From Dicyema japonicum (lineage: Eukaryota; Animalia; Dicyemida): DNA of 64,000 bases. Each line of letters begins with the position of its first letter. Within the stretch, counting starts at the first letter, position 1. Below are positions 2,985-62,640 of this stretch, piece by piece. The translations under genes were made by a program, and so were the position numbers. Under the pieces are notes generated by a model, which worked only from the letters and a program-made list of their open reading frames with translations, searched no databases and was not told the DNA's origin. The stretch is taken from positions 682,001 through 746,000 of the forward strand of contig RDEW01000003.1 of assembly GCA_011109175.1 (NCBI GenBank). Reading direction: 5' to 3'.

Positions 2985-3207
2985 TTCCAAAGACCAAGGG
3001 TAACCGAACTAACTAGCTCCTCGATCCTGACTCGTTCCAGCATTTCAGAACTTGTCATTAGGTAACGACATTGTCCCCAGGAAAGAATTGTTGGATCCTC
3101 TTGATGATGGCCAGGCATTGGGAGCATCCTCAGTAAGGTGGATCCAGTGACGCTAAGGAAGGAAAATAATTTTGACAAACTATTCACGTAGCACCACATG
3201 GCGCCAC
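2985..3207 (-). mobile_element. Non-autonomous SINE-like element, family A (copy 1)
   Basis: ~220 bp, three homologous copies in the window; begins gtggcgccatgtggtgc, has a structured core, ends gttacccttggtctttg followed by AT-rich sequence. Confidence 0.75.
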
Positions 3208-4142: not shown

Positions 4143-4365
4143 TACAAAGACCAATGGTAACCAAACTAACTAACTCCTCGCTCCTGACTTGCTCCAGCAT
4201 TTCAGAACTTGTCACTAGGTAACGACGCTGTCCTCGGGGAAGAATTGTTGGATCCTCTTGATGCCGGCCAAGCATTGGGCGCCTCCTCAGTAAGGTCCAT
4301 TGACGCAAGCGAAAAGAAGGAAAATAATTTTGACAAACTATTCACGTAGCACCACATGGCGCCAC
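4143..4365 (-). mobile_element. Family A SINE-like element (copy 2)
   Basis: Homologous to 2985-3207 over its full length, with a small deletion in the core. Confidence 0.75.
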
Positions 4366-6890: not shown

Positions 6891-7975
6891 ATGAAAATTG
6901 TGACGTCATTTGATCCACCTGTCTAAAGAGACACTCATCGCCTGGCCTGCATATAAAAAAGATCACACCTTTCTCTAGTAACTGGAGGGTTCTCTTAATG
7001 GCGGATATGGAGGGACTGGAAAGTGTAAGTTTTATTCTGACATGGTAACTGGGATCACACTCTTTTTCTTTCTTTTTAATCGGGAGATCATGAAGAATAA
7101 ATGCAGATTATCTTCTGAACAACTCTTGATCACCCCACGTATTTCAATTGTCCATAGGAAAATAATATATCATTCCAAAACTAAGCCATAGCTGCAGTCT
7201 CTTGAATTCAAATAAAATCTCATTTAAAATTAATGATATCTTGGAATGAATACATCTCCCTTCGCTGGCCTGATTTTTACTCTTTTAAGGTTTACTCTTT
7301 GGTAAGCCCAGCACAATATCATAACTAGGGCATTTTTTATGGCAACTAAAATTTCAAAAAATGGAATATATAACATCTAAAAATGAATTCGTCATTCAAT
7401 AGTGTGTGAAGTTGCAGTATAGTTTAGATAAACTTTGATAAAGAAAATTGTTTTATTTTTAATTACACAAACACTCAACAACTACTAGAGGTTCCTTTCG
7501 AGAAAGGTTGACCGCTCTCATACTTAATAATCCAGCTCCTTTCTCTAATATCCTTCTTCATCCGATATGTTCAGCAGGGTCAGTGATCTGCTTCCAAGAT
7601 AAACAACATATTCTTCAATATGCCTGGCCCTAATTCTTATTAAACTGGCATATATTAATAAAAATGACCCTTGCATGAAAAATGTAATTTTATGGCAAAA
7701 AATTGCCCCAGTGATAACATAAAAATTGTCAACCTTTATGGTGCTTTCTTCGGTAGTCATTGTGTCTTGGAGATAAGAAACGCTGATGTGCTGACTCCAA
7801 AGATCCCGTGCAAGCTGGTCTTTTTTGTGACTGGATTTCAGTCCTCTTTTGTTAAAGCTTCCGAGAGAGAATGTGGAAGACGTTGTGAGCCACGAAAAAG
7901 GCATCTGTGCAAGAGAGGCACGTCACCACCTCAACAAAAAATGGCATTATTTATTTAACCCAAGAACACCAATAG

Positions 7976-10199: not shown

Positions 10200-11830
10200 A
10201 TTTTATTATTATTATTATTAAGCACTTTCCCGATGCCATGGGTCATGACAAAGCTTTGCAGAACAGGAAACAATAAGAGTTATTAAATTCATACATTTCC
10301 CTCTGTCCTAGGCAACGTCTCGAAAGGCGTCAAGGTCATCCCCGTCTTTTAATTGTTTCCCCACTGTCCGAAGGTCTCTATCCAGCGTAACGGGGAGAGT
10401 ATTTCTCGGATCCTTCCTGAAACGAGGTCCGTCAGCTTCGAAATAGTCCTCCGTGACAGAATTTGTTGGTGCCTCCAAATCCATTCTTAGAATGTGTCCA
10501 AATAGTCTCCACCTGCATGCCGTTATTTCTAGTGAGATAGGTTTGCTTGATGTCCTGGTAGCATTCATGTCGAGAGAAATGAAATCCACGTCATCCGCAT
10601 AAGCCACCACATCGATTTTTTGCTTCATAGTATGGTTTTAGCTCCCTCAATGCATCTTCCATGTATATGAAAAATAGTATGGGAGATAACGGATCCCCTT
10701 GAGGTGTCCCAGATATTGTTTCAAATGGCTTAGAGCACTTGTCCCGTACCCTGACCGATAGGTAAGTTTCTGATAAAGTACCCCTATCATCCAAGAAGAG
10801 GATTCGTCAAGGAATTCTGTGAGGACAAGCATCAATTTCTGACGAATGATTGAGTCAAAAGGTATTGACAAATCGATTCCAAGAATGTCGCGTTTTTGAA
10901 TTTTTGAATAGTAGAACAACGCCGTCTATGGCTCCAAACAATGTCAGAAGTCGATCTTCCTTCACGAAAACCGCTATGGAAAGCGGATATAAATAGTTCC
11001 GTACCAGGCTTTATTTTTTGTAGAGTAATAATTGTCAGTACTTTCCATATGTTTCATAAAGATTACTGGCCTGGGGTTCTCCACTTTTTCTTGAGCTTTG
11101 TTCGGTTTTTGGACAGGAATCTGTATCCTTCGTCCCAGGTGAAAATGGTCGTTTGTTTTAAAAATTACGTTGAACAGATCCGCAATAAGTACATGTAGGT
11201 TTTCACTTCCATACTTAAGTAGTTCTGGTTCTAGCCCATCTGGTCCTGGACATTTATTGTTTTTAAGCTTAGCGCATGCTCTTTGAACTTCTTCAGGAGT
11301 TATTTCCAACTCTAATTTCTTGGGATGGCCAGTAAATGCTGCAATTCCGTTGCTTTCTGAATTAATTTCTTAAAGTGGCCGGCAATTAGTTTTGCAGTCT
11401 GTTATCCGTCTGCCATTTTCGTCGTTTATGATTTGAGGTTGTCTGCGTTTGCCCCCACAGAGTAATCTAATCGCCTCATAGTACCTTCCATTGTCCTTCA
11501 GATCTACAAGTGCCTTGATATGTTCCTCAGTCTCGTTCCTTGACATAGTGGAAACGTACTTTCTGATTTTCTTCTTGAAATTTGTTCTTTCACGACTAAG
11601 CTCTGCTTTGATGTGCTTGTCTTCAGTGTTTAAGTATTGAAGCCAAATAGATTTTTGTTACTTCACAAGGAGTGATATCTCAGTTGTTTCACTTAGTGAT
11701 GTGCTGACAGTTTCTATGTATAGAAGTTGTTCCTCCGCTGCTCCCCGTATTGATTCTTGTATTTGTTTCCAGAGTTTGGGGATTTCTTGATTTATTTCAA
11801 AACAGCTCATCTCAATTGTATATTTTTGAA
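10200..11830 (-). mobile_element. RTE-clade LINE, 5'-truncated, with (TAA)n tail
   Basis: KCPGPDGLEPELLKYG, GTPQGDPLSP, VAYADDVDF, RWRLFGHILRM; ttattattattatta tail at ~10200. Confidence 0.9.
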
Positions 11831-11844
11831 GATTGAGGTCATTT

Positions 11845-12132
11845 ATGCCGAGAAAGAAGTTAAAGTAGACAACTAATTAAATGTATTCAGTTTCTACAGA
11901 AACAGAGTCCATCAGGAATCAACATAAAAGGTAAAAGACGTCAATAGTTGCCAGTTGTGGGACCACTCCAATGGAGTGGAGGAGAGCAAATGATCCTTTT
12001 TCGTGCCGGCCTGGCAATGGGCGCCACCTAGACAGATGGATCACATGACGCCACTCTAATAGGAAGAAAGAGGAAAAACAGACGAACAAAACAAACTTCA
12101 ACCAATTAGCTACGAAGCACCACATGGCGCAC
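11845..12132 (-). mobile_element. Non-autonomous SINE-like element, family B (copy 1)
   Basis: ~290 bp; homologous copies at 59327-59640 and 62380-62640. Confidence 0.75.
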
Positions 12133-12134
12133 GG

Positions 12135-12680
12135 TAAAACCAAACTAACTATCACGTTCCACGAAAATCCTCATCCTTTCCCGGTGCTTCTCCCTCGTGC
12201 CTACAAAAGCTCGTACTGGGCGGCTGACTGTATTTGCAGGGCCACCTTTCCAAATGCCGGAATTTAATTTTATAAGGGACTCCAGAGTAGTCGGTCCGGT
12301 TCTGTGTCTCCCACGAGTCCACTGCTCCGTGACTCTGAAAGCTTTCTTTTATACGTCCTAGATTTTCTTAGTATTCGTTCATAATAATGAAGGTTCCCAC
12401 GAAGAACACGCGTAGGAGAAGCATGGTTCAATGTATTGTTTGTAGATATTCATAAAGACCGGGTGGGTACCGGTCTTCCATATTCCAGATGAACATTTCA
12501 ATACATTGATTTTCTTCTCGAACTTCAGAACAATGTTTACCACGTGTGGTGACAAACATAAGTACGTATCCAGTGTCACGCCCAGGATCTTTTGACATTT
12601 GCTGAAGGGGATTTCAACGTTGTCCAATTTTAAGGTGACAGTCTTCTTCCCCAACCTTTTGTCCGAAGTAAACATAAACG
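12135..12680 (-). mobile_element. L2-like LINE 3' fragment
   Basis: FTSDKRLG...KILGVTLD...IEPCFSYACSSW, paralogous to the 7976-8872 ORF. Confidence 0.75.
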
Positions 12681-28257: not shown

Positions 28258-28470
28258 ATTCCAAAGACCAAGGGTAACAAACTAACTAACTCCTTGATCC
28301 TGACTCGTTCCAGCATCCAGAACTTGTCTCCAGGTAACGACATTGTCCCCCGGAGAAGAATAGTTGGATCCTCTTGATGCTGGCTAGGCATTGGGCGTCT
28401 CCTCAGTAAGGTTGATCCAATTACGACATCGGAAGAAAAATAATTTATGACCAACTAGCCACATAGCACC
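28258..28470 (-). mobile_element. Family A SINE-like element (copy 3)
   Basis: Homologous to 2985-3207. Confidence 0.7.
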
Positions 28471-34109: not shown

Positions 34110-35014
34110 TTTTTCAAGAATTTTTGAAGAGGGTCTTTAAGTGGCCGGTGAATCCTTTGGCCGTCCTGGTTTTAAGATTGGTCGCATATCGGCCAATTTT
34201 CATAGAGTATGGATGGAGTTCCTGCTAATGGAGAGGTTGAAAATTCGTGTGAGGTCCATGGCAGCATAAGGGCCAACCTTCTTGAATACTATAGTAGGGA
34301 TACCATCTGGACTGCTTGAGTAGGACGACTTTTGGTTTTGAATCATCTTCGCCACGACATCCATAGAAAGATTATTTGTGGTTGCGTCGGTGGAAGAAAT
34401 GGAGGACCCCCAATTTCTGATGAGGGATAAACTCACGGAAGAATAAACCTTCATAATCTTGTTTAAAAAGTTCTTGTTCTACAAGTCTTTGCAGGGAAGC
34501 GTCTTCAAAGAGTTTATGAAGCTCAGAAGAGTATTCCACATACTAGTGAGAAAGGACTGTTTGCTTAGGATGAACGTGAGGTTATTACAGTCCATCTCCT
34601 GTTTCACTTCGGCCTTGTTTCTGATCTCTCTCCAAAGCTCGAATCCTCACCCTGGTTTTCCAAGATTGAATTTGTAGGTTTTTTAAGCAATTTCTTTTCT
34701 TCGTAAATGAATCTTGATAAGTGTGATGAGTCCACTACCAGGGCGGTCACGTCGAAAAATGTTGTACCCGAGAAGGCAGGGTGTGTATTTAGGAAGATAG
34801 TCTTGTTTCTTGAAGTAAGCAAATGTCTCCCCTCTTATTCCGTTTATGCTTAGTTGTAAAAAAAAAAAGTTTTTGATAGGCAGGGGTTTGGATTTATATC
34901 TCCTTAGAGATATAAAGGACAATCTTTTTGGATTGGAAGGAATAAGGGATCATTTTTGTTTGTGAAGTAGATTCCACAACTTGTGTCACCAGAAACGTCG
35001 AACCACATGACGCG
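34110..35014 (-). mobile_element. L2-like LINE no. 2, 5' portion (structured leader, 2A-like motif, APE, start of RT), internally deleted
   Basis: LQLSINGIRG..CLLQETRL; SSPDGIPTIVFKKVGP..LTRIFNLS; RPILKPG. Confidence 0.75.
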
Positions 35015-35089
35015 TGCATAAGATCCATAAAATTCTTTAGATAACGGCAGCCACTTTCCAGCATCAAAATCAATATACAGTAAACCCTC

Positions 35090-43353: not shown

Positions 43354-46300
43354 CAATCAAATCAAATCAAATCAAATTTATTCCAAAGTAAGTAAGGAGT
43401 CAATTAAAGGGATTTTTAACGTGTCCGCTTTGCGGCCTGGACACTTCCACATGTATGCCCATCTCCCATTGTAGTCGTCCATTTAGTACGTATTGAGAAG
43501 CTGGTTGCCCAACCTTGCTTCGATATCTATTTTAAACGGGCCTGACAAGGCTATTCTCTTCCTCTGCGAGAGGCTTTCATGTAATTTCCTCCCGCAAGAG
43601 ATATTTTTATCGCCGCTCGCCTTGTTTCTCCAGGCGAGCGAGAATCCTTTCTCTCGAGGGAGTATAATACCATCCCTCGCATCCATAATATCAGTCTTGG
43701 GAGAATCACAGTTTGGAAGATATAGAGCATTGTATCGGCGTCCAGCATAAGTTTTTCTGGAGCAGAACATCGCTTGAACGGCCTTCTTTCTCCGCTCCTC
43801 GATGTCCTTCCGGTACGATCCTCTCCATCCACTGCAATCCCAGGTATTTCAGGCTAGAGACCTCGGTATCCGTAGCGTATACATCTCTCTCTGGTGTCGA
43901 TCCAGCCTGCATATTCGCAAGTAACTGGATTTTTCTGTGGATAGTTTCATCCCTCTCCTATCGCACCATGTCCGAACTCTGTCGACAAAAAGCCCCGATT
44001 CGTCGCTCAGAGATGTAGGCCTTCAGAGATGAGTCTAGGATTAAGATGTCATCCGCATAAAATCATCAGCTTGGTCCTAACGTTTTGTGGAGAAGGAAAA
44101 TCTTCCATAAATACGTTGAATAATAGAGGGCTTAGAATAGATCCCTGCGGCACTCCCCTTTTTAAACAATATATCTTCGGAATATCTTCCACCAACCACC
44201 ACGTTTGATATTCTCGCCAGTCAACAGGTTCTTCAGGCCATAAGGAACATTTGCTTTGATATTTTGATCGAACCAGTTGACAGAATAGGGCCTCGTGCCA
44301 TACACTGTCGAAAGCCTTAGATATGTCAAGGCAGACAAGGCTCAACTTGGCTCCTCTTCTCAAAAGCATTTGCAATCTCATAATTTAGAGAGTAAATGCA
44401 ATTACCAGACACGATCTCCTGGCGCGAAAACCCCATTGGTAACACTGTAGAAAAATTACTCTTTTTCTATGTATTGATTCAATTTTCTTGAAAATAATCC
44501 GTTCCATAATCTTCGATGTAGAACAGATAAGGCTTATAGGCCTATAACTAAGAGGATCTTTCCTCGACTTTCCCAGGTTTAGGGATCATCTTTACAATTG
44601 ATGCTTCCATAGTGAAGGGGAATGTCCGAGCTTGAAACTGCGTTATACATCTTTTGTAGAACAGACAGAAATTCATCGGATCCTTCTTTAAACATAGTCA
44701 TCGGAATGCTATCAAACCAGGAGCCTTGTTTTTGCACTCCGTATAGCAGTCTTGACTTCTGCCAATGTGATTACCTCTACCATACTATTCAGATCGTTTA
44801 TGGAGTAAACCATAGACTAGATATATCTTCTAAGAATTTTTCAGATATAATACTAACTGGGTCTACTCCCTGTATGTTTTCTAATTGTTTCCTGAATTCT
44901 GAAGGTACTCTTTCCAGGGGAATTGTTCTTGCATCTTTATCCGCCAGTACAATGTTCTTTGCTCTCAAATTTTTGTTGGTCAGTCTGGAGTCAATTTCCA
45001 AATGCAAGGATTTTTCCAGTGCACTTTCGAGGCTGCTTTCCTAACTTGGTTTTCGGAATACAACTTCAAGGCTCTCTGTAGAACTTTTTGTATAGCATCG
45101 ATATTATTTTTCAAAGTTATCCTGTCCCACATGTCCACACATCGTCTGTGCTTCGCCTTCAGAGTATTCCTCTCGCGAATAAGACTCCGAATAGAGGGAG
45201 GGCAGGACTGATTCGTTTTCGGAAGGATTTTTGAGTAAATCTTCTTTGCATATAATCGCAGATACATCGTAATAGTATTGGATAGATCTTGGTTGAAAGA
45301 ATCCAACTCATTATGTGTAGAAAAGGAATAATTAATCTTCATTAACATACTCTTCGATAAATAATGACGATAATGTTCCCAGTCTACCGACGAGGTATCA
45401 TAATACAGAAAAATGTCTTCAATAATATCCGGTTCAAGATTTATGGTCATCTCCATAGGGATATGGTCACTCCCTATATCCCAGAGTAACCTTGGCCTGT
45501 TTACATGGTCTAGTAGTTGTGGAGATACTAAGGCCAATCCCAGCATATCACCCCCGTAGTATGAGAAGTGGTTAGGTTCTTCGGTCGTTAAGACTTCGAC
45601 TCCAATTTCCCCGACCAGATCTGCTAGTAGTTGACCGTCCCTGTTGTTTCCATAGCATCCATAGGTCCTGTTCTTGGCGTTCAAATCTCCCACAAGGATC
45701 GACATTGGGTTTCTTTCGAAGAACTCGACAATTTTCACAGAGGACCGGGCCAAGTCCTTAGAATATAGCCCTCCCACGGTTATCCACGTTCCACCACATT
45801 GCACGTCGACAGACACGAATTCCGAATCGTCGGCCGATATAATGCAGTCGTTTCGAGTTTGCAATAGTTTATGAAAGAAGATTGAGGTTCCTGTTCCAGC
45901 AACTGCTCCATCTTTCCATGGAATGTCCACTGAGTCATATCCTTCCAGAATATAATGCCTTCCTTCTCGAATCTTCGTCTCGTTGACTACCAAGACATCT
46001 GCCTTGGCAGTCCTCATAAGTAGTGCTAGTTCATCATGCCTTTTCACCAAGGAGCGGGCATTCACCAGCACTAACTTTAGGGTTCTTTTCAGATTTCTTT
46101 TTGGTGGCCCGGGCTCTCCATGGCCAGGTCCACCATTTCCCGTAAATCCACTCCCATAGTAACACTGAGTTCTCTCAATCTTGTGATAATTTCATACAGT
46201 TCTTCTTTGATTTTTCCTGGTATTTTTCCTCTGGTTTGCCATGCTGGTTTGTTTGGTAGATTATCTGCAGACGGCTTGTTAACACTTGGACCAACAGTTC

Positions 46301-57646: not shown

Positions 57647-59326
57647 TATGCCCATTTGTAATTGATGCACCAAATATTTTTGTAGTCCCATCGTTTATTA
57701 GTGATTGTCCGTAAATCGAATGTTATCTCTTATAATGATGAGGAAACCCCTACCACGACGGTTTGAGCGGTCCATACGGATGCAGTGGTATCCTGGAAAA
57801 TGGGGGGTGGGTGATGATGGAGTAAGTCTGCTTTCTTGAAGTAAAATCAGGTCAATGTTCAGTTCTTTAATGAAAGACCGAATTTTGCTTTTAAATCCGT
57901 TGATGTTTATCTGTAGAATTGAGGTGGAGGTCCTAAATTAAGTTCAATGTCACCGGCGATAATTATCAGAAACCCATTCAGCCGAGGGGGATTAAAAAAG
58001 GGAAAGGCCGTCATCCGAAGATTCCTTCTTCGGATGGGAGGTAGTTAATGGTACTTTTCCGCGGTGCATTAAGTGCACCCTGAGCGCCTCCCAAACTTTC
58101 ATAACTAGTCGACCACATGACGCCACGTTTTAAACACATTAATTCAAAATAAATAACATAAATAAAAAATTATATTAATTTTTTATTTATTTTTGAGCCA
58201 TGTGTTTTAGACTCATGCATTAAATTATTTATAGAAAAAGCAAACTTCAATCTATATTTACCTTTTTAGTCACCATTTCTCAATCCAATTGAGAATGTAT
58301 TCAGCACGTGGATAAACTATTTTCCAGAGGAGGGCCTGAAATTATAAAAGAAGGTAGTTTTTTACCCTTAAAGATTGGTGACACTATAGAAAGTCACGTT
58401 AATGGTCGGGAAACCCTATAAATTAAATTTTAGTGAGGAAAATATTTTAAATCCCAAGACAGTCTTCTCTTTGATTTTTTAGGTCAATGATATCGAAAGT
58501 GAGGAATGAACGTCGGAAACAGAATGTTATCCAAAAGATTTTACTGGCAGTAGTGAGGGGAAACTCCAATTCCTTGGTTTTGTCTTGTTTTTTTAAATGC
58601 AATATTCAATTTACTAAATAAATACAATATTGAATTTTCTTTTCTAGAAACTGTCTATGTTGAAATATTAATTCTTAGATTGACAATTAACACGTGGTTG
58701 TATGTTTATTCAGTCAATTATTTCCAGAGATGCTATAATCCAGCAATGAGTCGTTAGTCACTTTGAAATTTATCTATGGGAATCTGACACTAAAGGTTGT
58801 AATGAGCCAATATATTTTTACGCTTTTTTGAAGTTTCTCGTTGTACTGCGTCGATATTCCATGTTTATTAAAAACTTGGTTAGTCTTTAGAGTCTTTTGG
58901 AGCACAACAGATTGAATGCAATGACTCTTTCATCCATCTTGATTGTCATTCAATGTTGAATATTTTCATCCTAAGAGACATATCAATGTGTCTTCACTAA
59001 AAAACTAATCTTAAAACTCTAGTCGGTTCACATTGATTTTTATCCTCCTCTTTGTCGCATTCTTTGAAAATGACGTTTGTAGTCTCAGTCTCGTTTGAAC
59101 ATTTGTAGTCTCATATTTGGTAATTATATGTTGATATCAGCCCCATGTGCCATATTGAATACGTGTACGTGTTTCCTTCGAATTTCCTTTGATTTCTATT
59201 TCTAAAACTAGCCAGTTCTTGATTTCCTATTGGGAGTTTTGAGTTGTTTAACCAAAATAGTTTTCATGTGTGTTAAGAGTATTTAAGCCTCTCAAATGAA
59301 ATTGAATCATTTGAAAATAGCCACAT

Positions 59327-59640
59327 GGTGCCACGTGGTGCTTCGTGTCTAATTGTTGAAGTTTCTGTTTGTTCTCCTGTTCCTTCTCTCTTCCTATTAG
59401 AGTGGCGTCATGTGATCCACTGTTTAGGTGTCGCCCAGTGCCTGGCTGGCACGAAAAAGGATCATTTGCTCTCCTCCACTCCACTGGAGGGGTTTCAACA
59501 ACTGCAACTATAGACGTCTATTACCCTTTATGCTGATTCCGGATGGACTCTGTTTCTGTAGAAGTAGTAACTGGATGCACTTAATTAGTTGTTTACTTTA
59601 ACTTCTTTCTCGGTGTATTTAGGGATAATAAATAAATGAA
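59327..59640 (+). mobile_element. Family B SINE-like element (copy 2)
   Basis: Homologous to 11845-12132; ends in an aataaataaa tail. Confidence 0.75.
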
Positions 59641-61749
59641 ATGACTACTTTGGCAAGTGAGTTGAGATTGAGTTTGGAAACCATGTTGAAAAGAGGTAAG
59701 TTTGATGGACGTATATATCTTTTAAGGAACAGTTTTTCCGAAACACCAGAAAGCACAGGGATAATAAAAAGTGTTCAATAAAAGGAAGGCAGGCTGGTCT
59801 TATTGATACTTACTCAAGATAATAAATTAAGGGAGATGTATAAAACAAGTTTCCTAGTTTTTTTTAGCCATACGTGTGTGTACGTGGGATTTAAGAGGAG
59901 TATTAGAATTTAAAGGTATTATTATCACCAACGATGCTCCCTACCAAGACAATCCTGGTTCAGCCAATTTCATTTTCATATGTAATCCTTCTCACCAAGT
60001 ATCTGGCGTATATGCAGTATCTCCCGATCACCTGGTTTAATCCTGATTAGAATGGAGACTAAAGATTATGTGCGTCTTATAACCAATTTATTGGTCGAAT
60101 GTTCAGGTGGTGATTTTTAAGCATTTCGAGACAACTCCATCCCTGGACACAACCAGATAATTTTACTTGACAATCGTAGAGAGAGAAAGCTCACTAGCGC
60201 TGGTAAATATTTTGTCAATGCTCATTCCTATTTGTTCCTTTATTTTTATAAACCCTGAATACACTAAGAAAAAAGTTAATAGTTAATGACTAATACTTTC
60301 CAGGTCACAAAAGTAGAAACCTTCTAATATCCCGTAAAGATCATGCAGTTGTGAGACTACTGATCCCCTTTAGTGCTGTCCAAGCAATAGGTGCTGCTTG
60401 AGACAGAAGGAACACATTATGCTACTCTTGTTGAACATGGAAAAAAGTACAGAAATGAGGAGAAATCTTCATAATTTATTTCTAATTATCCTGAGAATAT
60501 TAAATAATAAGCTAATTAATTCATAACTTGACCTATTTAACTATTCATTAAAATAAACATATTAATTAACTTTTTATTAAATCATTGTTAAATTTTAAAA
60601 TAATTTACATCTCACTTCATCGACGTGGATTAAGGTTCGAAGCAACTTTGTATGATAATACCAATAAAACCTTAAAGGTTCTCTAAATATCAATTGATCA
60701 AAAGTTTTTGAATAATTATTTATTTAGAAGATAATTAAGAAGGAAAGTAAAAAAATATCAATAATATAAATATTAAAAACATGATTAATTTTATTGTTTT
60801 AGGGTGGTTAACCAATTTAGCAATAATACATCAACTATTGACATATATTTCTAGTGGAGTATTGTGTCGTATTTCTGTTATTGAATTCAATCTTGCTGTT
60901 ATCAAAATGGTCGACGCTCAATTATTTTGCTAACTTCTAATCATCAGTATTACTTCAATAACAAGATTTCTACGATTGAATACAACAGTTGTCTTGGATA
61001 TTTCGTGTTCGAAAGCTACTTCGCAAACGAGATGTTCTTTCGCCCACATACACGTTACCTCCAAAATTGTTCTAAGACTTAGATGGCTACCTAAAAAACT
61101 AACAAAGCAGATCCTGTAAAATAACGCGGACAGAAAAACCCCGATCTTTTGGATATCAAAACTCTAATTTCGATTCTTTATTTAACGTTTGAGTGAGTCA
61201 ATTCTACTATAGTCATATTTCATTTCCATTGTATGTAAACCTGGAGTTAATTCAACCAAGTTCTATGATGGACGATCTACTACGAACTTTTTATGCTCGA
61301 ATTTCGAATAAAAATAATATAAATGGATTATACATTGAATTAAAATATTCTACCTTATATGTACCTGGAGAAGTTGTAGTTATCAATTCTGAGTGAATAT
61401 CAAAACATTTTACCTTTAGTTTTATATTTTATGTGAATGATAGCAAAGCTACGACAATTCCACAAATTACACAAATTGGATTATATATAATTTTTCTAAA
61501 TTTGTATTAAATGACTAAATATATGCGAGTATATTGTACTTCAAGTACCATGAGTTGTCACATAAAATTTTTGACTTTTTTAATTTGTGTTCAAACGTGT
61601 TGCTGGAATGTCTCCGAATCAAATTACACCCGAGTGCTAATGTCGGTTATTATAAGTAACCAATTCCAGTAAACATTGTATTATTATCTGTTTTTGATAA
61701 TTGAATTTTCATTTTTTTTTACGACTCCGTAATAAATGATATTTTTTTA

Positions 61750-61820: not shown

Positions 61821-62379
61821 ATGCTTGACATTATTTTCATTGTACAATTTTATAGAGAATGAAAAAAAACAAATAATATGAAAATTTTTATTATTTTCGT
61901 ATCTTGCTAAAATTCACCATACAAGGAGCCGCATCGCTAATAATTATAGGTGGGAGGCCACCCTTCCAAAAGATGTAGAGGGTGGAAAGTTCAAACGGTT
62001 CTCTTTAGTGCATAACTTGCACCGGGCGCCACCACAACAACAGGTGAACCTCATGTCGCCACGCTAAAGTTCAGAATTATCTTCCTCGGTGATCTTGGAG
62101 TTAAATAAATAAAAATCGCTAATAAATAAAATCAGATTTGAAATTTTAATAGGAATTTGTCATTAGCGTCTCTTTGTTTGAACTATAACATTCAAATGTA
62201 CTGAATTTACATCTGATTTCACGATGTATAAAGTCTCTGGATTACAAATTTCCCAACAATTACATTTAATATTATTTTACATTAATGTTAATAATTATGT
62301 TTTATTTAAAAAAAAATTTATTTTTGAAATAGCACAGTGTCCTATTTTTTGTCTTAAATAAGGTAATTTCTATTAAAGT

Positions 62380-62640
62380 ATTAGAGTGGCCAGTAGCGTC
62401 ATGTGATCCACCTGTCTAGGTGACGACCAGTGCCAGGCCGGCATGAAAAAGGATCATTTGCTCTCTCCCACTCCACTGGAGTGGTTTCCACAACTGCATG
62501 TAATGGACGTCTTACCCTTTATGCTGATTCCGGATGGACTCTGTATAAGTGGAAACTGGATACATACACTTAATTAGTTGTTTTTACTTTAACTTCTTTT
62601 TCTTGGTGTATCCGGGGTTAATAAATAAATAAAATAATAA
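62380..62640 (+). mobile_element. Family B SINE-like element (copy 3, begins near the structured core)
   Basis: Homologous to 59395-59640; (TAAA)n tail. Confidence 0.75.

What the first reader, a model, noticed from the sequence alone, without database searches (positions are those of the whole stretch)
11991..12052. Candidate HDV-like pseudoknot ribozyme in SINE-like family B, shared by four retroelement families
Seen: on the minus strand the core parses as GGCGUCA (P1) UG UGAUCC (P2) AUCUGUCUAGG (P3/L3) UGGCGCC (P1') CAU UGCC-AGGCC-GGCA (P4) CGAAAAA (J4/2) GGAUCA (P2'). This is the P1-P2-P3-P1'-P4-P2' order of HDV-family ribozymes, with an A-rich J4/2. The same order recurs in the other B copies (59404-59464, 62395-62456), in family A, and at two LINE 5' ends, with different stem sequences that still pair. 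Established: HDV-like ribozymes cut the 5' ends of R2, RTE and L1Tc transcripts. Inference: this is a non-canonical self-cleaving RNA. Caveats: L3 lacks the usual UYCNCG and the G38G39 P1.1 pair (a conserved CA replaces it and could pair with a UG in L3), and in family B the candidate catalytic C may instead extend P4.
Basis: partly seen in the sequence, partly recalled or inferred. Interest (0 to 1): 0.9.

Follow-up and report, generated by a model that had tools for sequence, protein, structure and literature searches.

The report
HDV-shaped RNA knot in LINE/SINE repeats
A 62-base RNA module that folds in the helix order of hepatitis-delta-type self-cutting RNAs sits at the front of two jumping-gene (LINE) families and inside about ten thousand short repeats, but the genomic copies show that the RNAs which got copied had not been cut there.

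Summary
The scan had already found this module several times on other DNA of this genome.

The fold is real:
- P2 co-varies between seven module families.
- P4 is a hairpin of unrelated sequence in each family.
- 82-84% of the P1/P2/P3 cells pair, against 34-57% when partners are slid.

The module comes from the 5' ends of LINEs. There it follows a 3-10 nt leader and holds the start codon (nt 7-9) of an ORF that runs through a 2A peptide into the endonuclease. SINE-like family B is a retroposed element with target-site duplications. It carries a degenerate copy of the module as its head and an intact copy about 79 nt downstream.

Self-cleavage is not supported:
- No Rfam match.
- The canonical P1.1 and L3 core is absent.
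- In the B consensus the candidate catalytic C can pair into P4.
- About 94 of 100 sampled B copies keep their upstream sequence, and at most one could start at G1.
- About 42 of 47 LINE1-type copies keep the 'CGT' leader and none clearly starts at G1.

No RNA-seq run exists to map RNA ends. My best reading is an HDV-topology pseudoknot that works uncleaved, or cleaves only weakly.

The parts
11991..12052 (-). The module in the finding (family B, copy 1), as an HDV-type double pseudoknot. P1 5' strand 12046-12052; J1/2 12044-12045; P2 5' strand 12038-12043; P3/L3 12027-12037; P1' 12020-12026; CAU 12017-12019; P4 hairpin 12004-12016; J4/2 CGAAAAA 11997-12003; P2' 11991-11996.
   Evidence: CM hit at 11989-12060, 80.9 bits
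11892..12134 (-). The whole SINE-like family B copy that holds the module. Its head at about 12085-12134 is a degenerate second copy of the LINE 5' end (GCGCCATGTGGTGC...). A pyrimidine-rich spacer, the module, the body and a LINE-type tail follow. This copy lies in a duplicated segment and is cut short at both ends.
59404..59464 (+). Family B module, copy 2 (element about 59310-59650, flanked by the target-site duplication AAATGAAAT). It has one P1 mismatch and a 1-nt deletion in L3.
62395..62456 (+). Family B module, copy 3. The element is 5'-truncated or rearranged about 15 nt upstream of the module. P1 has two mismatches, and the J4/2 C has changed to U.
3090..3154 (-). Family A internal module (P2 UGGAUCC/GGAUCCA, J4/2 UCAAGA). 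The family A head (AAAACGTGTGGCGCCATGTGGTGC) lies about 50 nt upstream on the same strand, near 3205. Further A-type modules are at 4247-4315 (-), 28364-28435 (-), 6894-6967 (+) and 60359-60431 (-).
58047..58132 (-). 5' end of LINE family 1. A leader (TTAAAACGT) precedes the module, whose G1 is at 58124. The start codon is module nt 7-9 (58116-58118). In the family consensus the ORF continues through a DIELNPGP 2A motif into the AP endonuclease; this copy is decayed.
34945..35022 (-). 5' end of LINE family 2. The module's position 1 is at 35014. P1 is GCGUCA/UGGCGC in better copies, P2 is GGUUC/GGACC, and P4 is UUGUGG..UCACAA. ATG again sits at module nt 7-9.
61994..62068 (-). A further module family ('F') at the 5' end of a short element, with leader TTTAGCGT. 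P2 is GGUUC/GAACC. This copy has no C in J4/2 (UAAAGA).

Best explanation
The 62-nt segment is a conserved RNA module with the nested double-pseudoknot topology of HDV-family ribozymes.

Origin. It comes from the extreme 5' end of single-ORF, AP-endonuclease-type LINEs. There it follows a short leader and holds the start codon in J1/2, upstream of a 2A peptide. Non-autonomous elements copied it. Families A and B keep a degenerate copy as their head; its first ~25 nt are probably the promoter or start-site part, acting as DNA. They also keep an intact copy inside the element.

Function. In these elements the module most likely works uncleaved, as a cis-acting structured RNA signal of the LINE 5' end. 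I infer that it serves translation initiation and/or recognition by the LINE protein, and that the SINEs carry it to borrow that machinery. It may descend from an HDV-like ribozyme, or be a weak or regulated one. It does not define the 5' end of the RNAs that get retrotransposed.

Shown: the fold, its covariation, its position, the embedded start codon, and retention of upstream sequence in genomic copies. Inferred: the function as a translation or recognition signal, and the promoter role of the head.
For: Fold:
- P2 pairs best with its own family's partner (mean duplex energy -9.19 against -6.11 kcal/mol across families; 17 of 20,000 permutations do as well). In 6 of 7 families the partner lies directly after the A-rich J4/2.
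- P2 shows compensatory changes at five positions between families (for example A-U 36 rows against G-C 34 rows at one pair).
- P4 is a hairpin of unrelated sequence in all seven families.
- 82-84% of cells pair, against 34-57% with slid partners.

LINE origin and coding:
- Homology among 28 LINE1 copies begins 3-10 nt upstream of G1.
- In the majority sequence of 20 copies the first ATG is module nt 7-9, and the frame stays open through DIELNPGP into the endonuclease.

Not cleaved in the templates:
- About 42 of 47 LINE1-type copies genome-wide keep the 'CGT' leader; the other five have variant or mutated leaders and none clearly starts at G1.
- About 94 of 100 B-type copies keep the canonical 15 nt upstream, and at most 1 could begin at G1.
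- B copies have target-site duplications 15-22 nt upstream of the head, about 100 nt upstream of the internal module. 5'-truncated B copies with duplications do exist, so truncated RNAs can insert.

Core:
- P1.1 CC/GG and the L3 U..CG are missing.
- The B consensus pairs the would-be catalytic C into P4.
- No Rfam hit.

Precedents:
- Pr77/L1TcRz is both a promoter and a ribozyme.
- SIDER2 elements carry two such signatures.
- Some well-folding SIDER ribozymes are inactive (PMC3185411, PMC4035085).
Against: Several catalytic-type features are present:
- J4/2 begins with, or contains, C-R-R-A in 5 of 7 families (CGAA, CGGA, CAAA), as the published descriptor requires.
- G1 pairs with a pyrimidine, and in LINE1 this is the canonical G-U wobble.
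- Position -1 is U in nearly all families, the preferred base in HDV (PMC1874588).
- A 2-bp UG/CA substitute for P1.1 can be drawn in most families.

L1TcRz works with a single-pair P1.1, and its authors found the classical descriptor too restrictive. The LINE version might therefore cleave in vitro.

The genomic test only covers RNAs that were successfully copied. A cleaved fraction used for something else would be invisible to it.

The proposed role in translation or recognition is inference only. No protein-binding or translation data exist.
Confidence: 0.55

Rival explanations
1. It is an active, non-canonical HDV-like self-cleaving ribozyme that cuts 5' of G1. It would process LINE and SINE transcripts in the way R2, RTE and L1Tc ribozymes do.
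For: - The helix order, G1-Y pair, U at -1, C-R-R-A in J4/2 and A-rich J4/2 are all present.
- It is 5'-terminal in two LINE families.
- The same 5' fold + 2A + endonuclease layout occurs in L1Tc, whose 77-nt 5' end is a proven ribozyme.
- Ribozymes of that clade escape the classical descriptor.
Against: - The leader upstream of G1 is inherited in about 42 of 47 LINE1-type copies and none clearly starts at G1. The upstream SINE sequence is inherited in about 94% of B copies, with no pile-up of copies starting at G1.
- P1.1 CC/GG and the L3 U-G pair, which build the metal site, are absent.
- J4/2 is 6-8 nt long instead of 4.
- The B consensus sequesters the C.
- One family has no C in J4/2.
- No Rfam hit.
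Confidence: 0.18
2. The conserved thing is DNA, not RNA. The module would be an internal promoter or start-site element of the LINE (the 'LINE-promoter SINE' idea), and the RNA pairings would be incidental.
For: - Element 5' ends lie a fixed few bases upstream of the motif in at least five families.
- The A and B heads keep only the first ~25-45 nt and have lost P1'.
- Mollusc LP-SINEs with a ~70-bp LINE-derived head, a CT-rich spacer, target-site duplications and a polyA signal before 3' repeats were read this way (PMC4758252). B has the same layout.
Against: A DNA element explains neither compensatory changes in P2 nor the replacement of P4 by unrelated hairpins. It also does not explain why A and B keep an intact module about 50-80 nt inside the transcript, in addition to the head.
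Confidence: 0.17
3. There is no functional structure. The pairings would be chance complementarity in a SINE body, or remnants of tRNA-like pol III boxes (TAGCTAATTGG, GTGATCC).
For: - P1 is nearly invariant in sequence, so it carries little covariation.
- Part of the apparent P1 compensation can come from CpG decay on both strands.
- Nested MFE z-scores of single modules are unremarkable (-1.8 to +0.1).
Against: - The cognate-partner test for P2 gives 17 of 20,000 permutations.
- All seven P4 hairpins are at or below the 7th percentile of shuffles.
- Slid-partner controls pair at only 34-57%.
- The module is shared with protein-coding LINE 5' ends, not with tRNAs. Rfam reported no tRNA or other RNA-family match anywhere in the window.
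Confidence: 0.05

Closest known systems
Pr77 hallmark / L1TcRz of trypanosomatid L1Tc-ingi LINEs and their NARTc, RIME and SIDER derivatives (PMC3185411, PMC4035085)
   Same: - An HDV-topology fold fills the first ~77 nt of a single-ORF AP-endonuclease LINE that has a 2A peptide just before the endonuclease.
- The same hallmark heads the non-autonomous derivatives.
- SIDER2 carries two copies, one of them internal.
- The hallmark has two proposed roles, promoter and RNA.
- Some copies fold well but are inactive.
   Different: - L1Tc copies begin exactly at the cleavage site (+1). Here a 3-10 nt leader (15-22 nt in SINE B) is inherited.
- No sequence similarity was tested, because the Pr77 sequence was not at hand.
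- The host is an animal, probably a cephalopod according to earlier notes of this scan (not verified here).
- Cleavage is untested.
HDV-like ribozymes of R2, RTE, Baggins and other animal non-LTR elements, and the CPEB3/HDV core
   Same: - Helix order P1-P2-P3-P1'-P4-P2'.
- P1 of 6-7 bp starting with G paired to a pyrimidine.
- A short P3 (ACC/GGU here, GCC/GGC in HDV).
- C-R-R-A after P4.
- Position at LINE 5' ends.
- A proposed link to translation initiation (recalled from the literature, not read here).
   Different: - No C-C/G-G P1.1 and no U..C-G in L3.
- J4/2 is 6-8 nt long, against 4 in the canonical core.
- The start codon lies inside the fold.
- No Rfam model matches.
- Genomic copies argue against cleavage at G1.
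LP-SINEs ('LINE promoter' SINEs) of gastropods and bivalves (Matetovici et al. 2016, PMC4758252)
   Same: These are mollusc SINEs without a tRNA head. Their first ~70 bp derive from the 5' end of LINEs of different clades. In scallops a CT-rich region follows the head. They have variable target-site duplications, and their 3' tandem repeats are preceded by a polyA signal. Family B has all of these features.
   Different: That paper proposes only a promoter role and describes no RNA fold. Its sequences are in figures not held here, so homology with this module could not be tested. Here the intact module is internal and the head is a degenerate copy.

Membership tests
HDV-like self-cleaving ribozymes | Nested double pseudoknot with strand order P1-P2-P3-P1'-P4-P2' | tested here: met
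   The parse holds in seven module families. P2 is supported by the cognate-partner test. P4 hairpins are present in every family. Pairing is 82-84% against 34-57% with slid partners.
HDV-like self-cleaving ribozymes | G1 paired with a pyrimidine at the base of P1, with the cleavage site immediately 5' and U preferred at -1 | tested here: met
   G1-C in families B and A. G1-U wobble in LINE1. C1/A mismatch in LINE2, where P1 starts at G2. Position -1 is U in nearly all families. Descriptor from PMC6326823; the -1 preference from PMC1874588.
HDV-like self-cleaving ribozymes | P1.1: two C in L3 paired with two G directly after P1' | tested here: not met
   The bases after P1' are CA (B, A, LINE1, C), AA (LINE2) or CG (F), and L3 has no CC. 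A UG/CA or UU/AA substitute pair can be drawn in most families, but it is short enough to arise by chance.
HDV-like self-cleaving ribozymes | L3 with a conserved U...C-G (reverse U-G wobble that helps bind the catalytic metal) | tested here: not met
   L3 is UGUCUA in B, UUACUG(A) in A, an 11-15 nt loop in LINE1, GUUUCU in LINE2 and AGAAAC in C. L3 is not conserved between families.
HDV-like self-cleaving ribozymes | J4/2 = C-R-R-A with an unpaired catalytic C directly after P4 | tested here: inconclusive
   C-R-R-A is present in 5 of 7 families (CGAA in B and C, CGGA in LINE1, CAAA in LINE2 and D). However, J4/2 is 6-8 nt long, and the C is the second base in LINE1, LINE2 and D. It is paired with G36 in the B consensus, absent in F, and family A has CAAG.
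HDV-like self-cleaving ribozymes | [quoted passage not shown] | not testable with these tools
   No RNA run exists for this organism. The indirect genomic test speaks against it: leaders and heads upstream of G1 are inherited.
HDV-like self-cleaving ribozymes | Match to a curated family model (Rfam HDV, CPEB3, drz families) | tested here: not met
   No hit at gathering score in the whole window. No hit at E<=10 on 11600-12500, nor on a consensus-like LINE1 5' end.
Non-autonomous retroposon (SINE-like, LINE-mobilised) | High copy number, target-site duplications, a 3' tail with simple repeats, and no coding capacity | tested here: met
   More than 600 exact-motif copies. Target-site duplications of 7-18 bp in at least 12 of 28 copies. 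Tail ...GGTTAATAAATAAAT(AAAT)n. ATG-TGA inside the module.
LP-SINE (LINE-promoter-headed SINE, PMC4758252) | Head homologous to the ~70-bp 5' domain of Nimb-17_LMi / I-3_DR / RTE-9_CPB | not testable with these tools
   The reference sequences appear only in figures not held in the library. The layout (LINE-derived head, CT-rich spacer, duplications, polyA signal) matches.

The most novel reading that the evidence does not exclude
The HDV ribozyme fold has been kept here for a job other than cutting. Under this reading it is a 5'-terminal double pseudoknot that presents the LINE's start codon and/or is recognised by the LINE protein. About 10^4 SINE copies carry it internally to hijack that machinery, much as Alu mimics SRP RNA to reach the ribosome. 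If so, the 'LINE promoter' heads of mollusc SINEs would be RNA structural mimics as well as promoters.
Probability: 0.3. Interest if true: 0.7.

Novelty: new variant of a known kind. Interest (0 to 1): 0.5.

Why it matters
HDV-like folds at LINE 5' ends are usually read as 5'-processing ribozymes. This module is very abundant and clearly structured. It has that topology and part of the catalytic signature, yet thousands of genomic copies show that the transposing RNA was not cut at the predicted site.

If that holds, it is a natural example of a ribozyme scaffold reused, or kept silent, as a structural signal. It would also offer a structural explanation for why unrelated LINE clades and mollusc SINEs share a ~70-nt 5' domain.

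It is also a cheap target for experiment. A 62-76 nt RNA with natural variants (G-U against G-C at the cleavage pair, with or without the J4/2 C) is ready for cleavage, translation and retrotransposition assays.

Tried and rejected
- RNA read mapping. The look-up of sequencing runs found only four runs of one study, all kept as contigs and none recorded as RNA. Read laying was therefore not used, and RNA ends could not be mapped.
- A wider genome sample. I used genome-wide IUPAC pattern searches that print the matched upstream bases instead.
- Rfam at permissive thresholds gave only two chance hits elsewhere in the stretch (fstAT, CLRN1-AS1) and nothing from the HDV clan.
- LINE clade. A protein search with the 2A + endonuclease piece returned three unnamed proteins, so the clade (Ingi, CR1 or L2-like) stays open. 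The window copies have no long ORFs.
- Column-based covariation across all families. Families A and C are shifted by one base between J1/2 and J4/2, in both the MAFFT and the CM alignment, so their P2 cells count as broken. The cognate-partner test avoids this problem.
- An alternative cleavage site at the true 5' end of the elements. No complement to the leader exists downstream, so this was rejected.
- An alternative P1 using the head's GGCGCCA, which is a perfect complement of the internal P1'. This would make a ribozyme with a large J1/2 insert. It was rejected for the same reason as above: copies keep 15-22 nt upstream of the head.
- The Ruminski et al. 2011 paper is not held in the library. 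What I say about it comes from memory.

Full report
**1. The observation**

The segments are:
- P1: GGCGUCA, pairing with P1' UGGCGCC (7 pairs, one of them U-G)
- J1/2: UG
- P2: UGAUCC, pairing with P2' GGAUCA (6 Watson-Crick pairs)
- P3/L3: an 11-nt segment
- Linker after P1': CAU
- P4: UGCC-AGGCC-GGCA
- J4/2: CGAAAAA

The two other B copies (59404+, 62395+), family A (3154-) and the two LINE 5' ends (58124- and 35014-) all carry related modules. The scan had already noted this module many times on other DNA of this genome. I used those notes for coordinates and tested their claims myself.

**2. What the element is**

Family B is a retroposon of about 240-260 nt.
- BLAST against the assembly (G000, 67.5 Mb in 377 contigs) gave 1,663 first-look candidates.
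- The exact 15-mer that begins the module occurs 608 times, against 0 for the reversed control.
- A covariance model of the module finds 93 instances in 339 kb of local sequence and about 15,700 rough candidates genome-wide.
- At least 12 of 28 B copies show target-site duplications of 7-18 bp. These place the 5' end 15-22 nt upstream of the head motif GTGGCGCC.
- The 3' end is ...GGTTAATAAATAAAT(AAAT)n, a polyA signal followed by a short repeat.

The module is not at the 5' end of B. It starts about 79 nt after the head motif. The head (GCCGCGT-GGCGCCATGTGGTGCTTCGTG...) is a degenerate second copy of the LINE 5' end that has lost P1'. A pyrimidine-rich spacer follows it. Family A has the same plan.

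**3. Origin at LINE 5' ends**

Twenty-eight copies of LINE family 1 align from a leader (TT)AAAACGT directly upstream of G1, and homology stops 3-10 nt before G1. LINE family 2 begins about 4 nt before the module. At least three more short families (C, D, F) have the module at their 5' end, after a 7-nt leader TTAGCGT.

In a majority sequence of 20 LINE1 copies, the first ATG is module nt 7-9 (A7 of P1 plus J1/2). The frame then runs uninterrupted through a DIELNPGP 2A motif into the AP endonuclease (single copies). LINE2 has the ATG at the same place.

A 2A peptide immediately before the endonuclease of single-ORF non-LTR elements is known for L1Tc and Ingi (including an Aplysia Ingi) and for CR1, L2 and Rex1 elements (PMC3708506). 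I computed majority sequences only for the first 100-340 nt, to compare families.

**4. Is the fold real?**

Yes.
- **P2.** I took nt 8-16 of each of seven family sequences and the 40 nt downstream of P1'. The best duplex with the cognate partner averages -9.19 kcal/mol, against -6.11 for non-cognate partners, and only 17 of 20,000 permutations do as well. In six families the partner lies right after the A-rich stretch. Between families P2 reads UGAUCC/GGAUCA, UGGAUCC/GGAUCCA, UGGUCU/GGACCA, GGUUC/GGACC, UGGCUC/GAGCCA and GGUUC/GAACC. These differ by compensatory changes at five positions.
- **P4.** It is a hairpin of unrelated sequence in every family, each at or below the 7th percentile of shuffles.
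- **P3.** It is a short ACC/GGU stem that closes a loop of 6-15 nt.
- **P1.** It is mostly conserved in sequence, with a few changes that keep pairing (G-C, G-U or A-U at pair 1; U-G or U-A at pair 5; C-G to U-A at pair 3 in family C). Some of these could be CpG decay on both strands.
- **Pair counts.** On an unfitted MAFFT alignment, 82.1% of cells pair, against 34-53% with slid partners, but the covariation score is reached by 48 of 500 shuffles. On 88 distinct rows aligned to a model that contained P2 and P3 but not P1, 83.9% pair against 34-57%, and 0 of 500 shuffles reach the score. Much of that signal is one inherited event, A-U against G-C at one P2 pair.
- **Nested folds.** Nested MFE folding picks either P1+P4 or P2+P3+P4, depending on the family. 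That is what a pseudoknot would produce.

**5. Is it a ribozyme?**

*For.* The topology fits. G1 pairs with a pyrimidine, and in LINE1 this is the canonical G-U wobble. Position -1 is U. J4/2 contains C-R-R-A in five of seven families. The setting is 5'-terminal in LINEs, like L1Tc, whose first 77 nt are both promoter and ribozyme (PMC3185411).

*Against.*
- (a) No Rfam model matches, even at E<=10 on short stretches.
- (b) A published descriptor of the family fixes G1-Y, the C-C/G-G P1.1, U..C-G in L3, and C-R-R-A (PMC6326823). P1.1 and the L3 core are absent here, and L3 is not conserved between families.
- (c) J4/2 is 6-8 nt long. In the B consensus (CAG after P1') the G pairs with the would-be catalytic C. 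The designers of artificial HDV ribozymes deliberately avoided a similar G-C mispairing of this C. One family has no C at all.
- (d) The genomic copies are a record of the RNAs that were reverse-transcribed. Of 47 LINE1-type copies in the assembly, about 42 keep at least CGT upstream of G1. The other five have variant or mutated leaders, and none clearly begins at G1. Of 100 listed B-type copies, about 94 keep the canonical 15 nt of SINE sequence upstream, and at most one could begin at G1. 5'-truncated B copies with target-site duplications do exist, so truncated RNAs can insert. An efficient ribozyme would have left many copies starting at G1. L1Tc copies, by contrast, begin at the cleavage site.

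Kojima (PMC5786205) already pointed out that a ribozyme inside a SINE would cut off its head. In trypanosomatids some SIDER hallmarks that fold well are inactive (PMC4035085).

**6. Best reading**

The module is a conserved HDV-topology pseudoknot that comes from LINE 5' ends. It is not cut, or only weakly cut, in the RNAs that transpose.

Structure is maintained both in coding LINE contexts and in non-coding SINE contexts. B has ATG-TGA inside the module and A has lost the ATG, so the fold has an RNA-level role that is independent of coding. In the LINEs the fold holds the start codon, and the SINEs keep it together with a LINE-type tail. From this I infer a role in translation initiation and/or recognition by the LINE protein, which the SINEs exploit.

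The A and B heads retain the first ~25-45 nt without the rest of the fold, and element 5' ends lie at a fixed short distance upstream. This fits a separate, DNA-level promoter role, as proposed for mollusc LP-SINEs (PMC4758252) and shown for Pr77. These functional statements are inferences.

**7. Novelty**

HDV-like folds at LINE 5' ends, and in their short derivatives, are known. That includes a second, internal copy in SIDER2 elements. The paper library holds no report of such a fold in cephalopods or other molluscs, and the LP-SINE paper describes no RNA structure.

Three things are new here: the non-canonical core, the embedded start codon, and the genomic evidence that the fold persists without defining the RNA's 5' end. 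I rate it a new variant of a known kind, of moderate interest. The decisive cleavage and end-mapping experiments are simple, but they could not be done here because no RNA data exist for this organism.

Noticed in passing
window 57928-58118 (-); better copies L043:1507-2073:+ and L041:1652-2347:+: LINE family 1 encodes a leader peptide of about 57 aa. It starts at the ATG inside the pseudoknot and ends in a canonical 2A motif (GDIELNPGP) directly before the AP endonuclease. There is no ORF1. This is the L1Tc/Ingi-type layout. LINE2 has a degenerate version (DINPNP).
   Followed up: partly
window ~11400-12500 and ~34500-35070, against G000:C235:458815-462122 (L002) and C235:474793-478513 (L062/L063): The flanks of B copy 1 (95% identity over the whole 301-nt query, unique flank included) and the LINE2 5' region (88-95%) recur about 16 kb apart on contig C235. 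Part of this window is therefore a segmental duplication, and B copy 1 is not an independent insertion.
   Followed up: no
L014-L016 (G000:C290:515353-516072; also C371:3140-3609): Identical family B copies with identical flanks repeat every 468 bp. This is a tandem array that contains the SINE, not separate insertions.
   Followed up: no
window 44983-46191 (-): A 403-codon open stretch encodes an AP endonuclease and linker of a different, better-preserved LINE.
   Followed up: no
window 12085-12134 (-) and the B consensus head: The head's GGCGCCA is a perfect 7-bp complement of the internal module's P1' (UGGCGCC, a palindromic core). It could therefore compete with the module's own P1 strand, which has one U-G pair. 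This is a possible conformational switch within the SINE RNA.
   Followed up: partly
L059:49-723:-: About 1.1 kb downstream of a truncated LINE1 5' end lies a 225-codon open stretch that looks like the reverse transcriptase of an unrelated element (YLDD motif). It was not classified.
   Followed up: no
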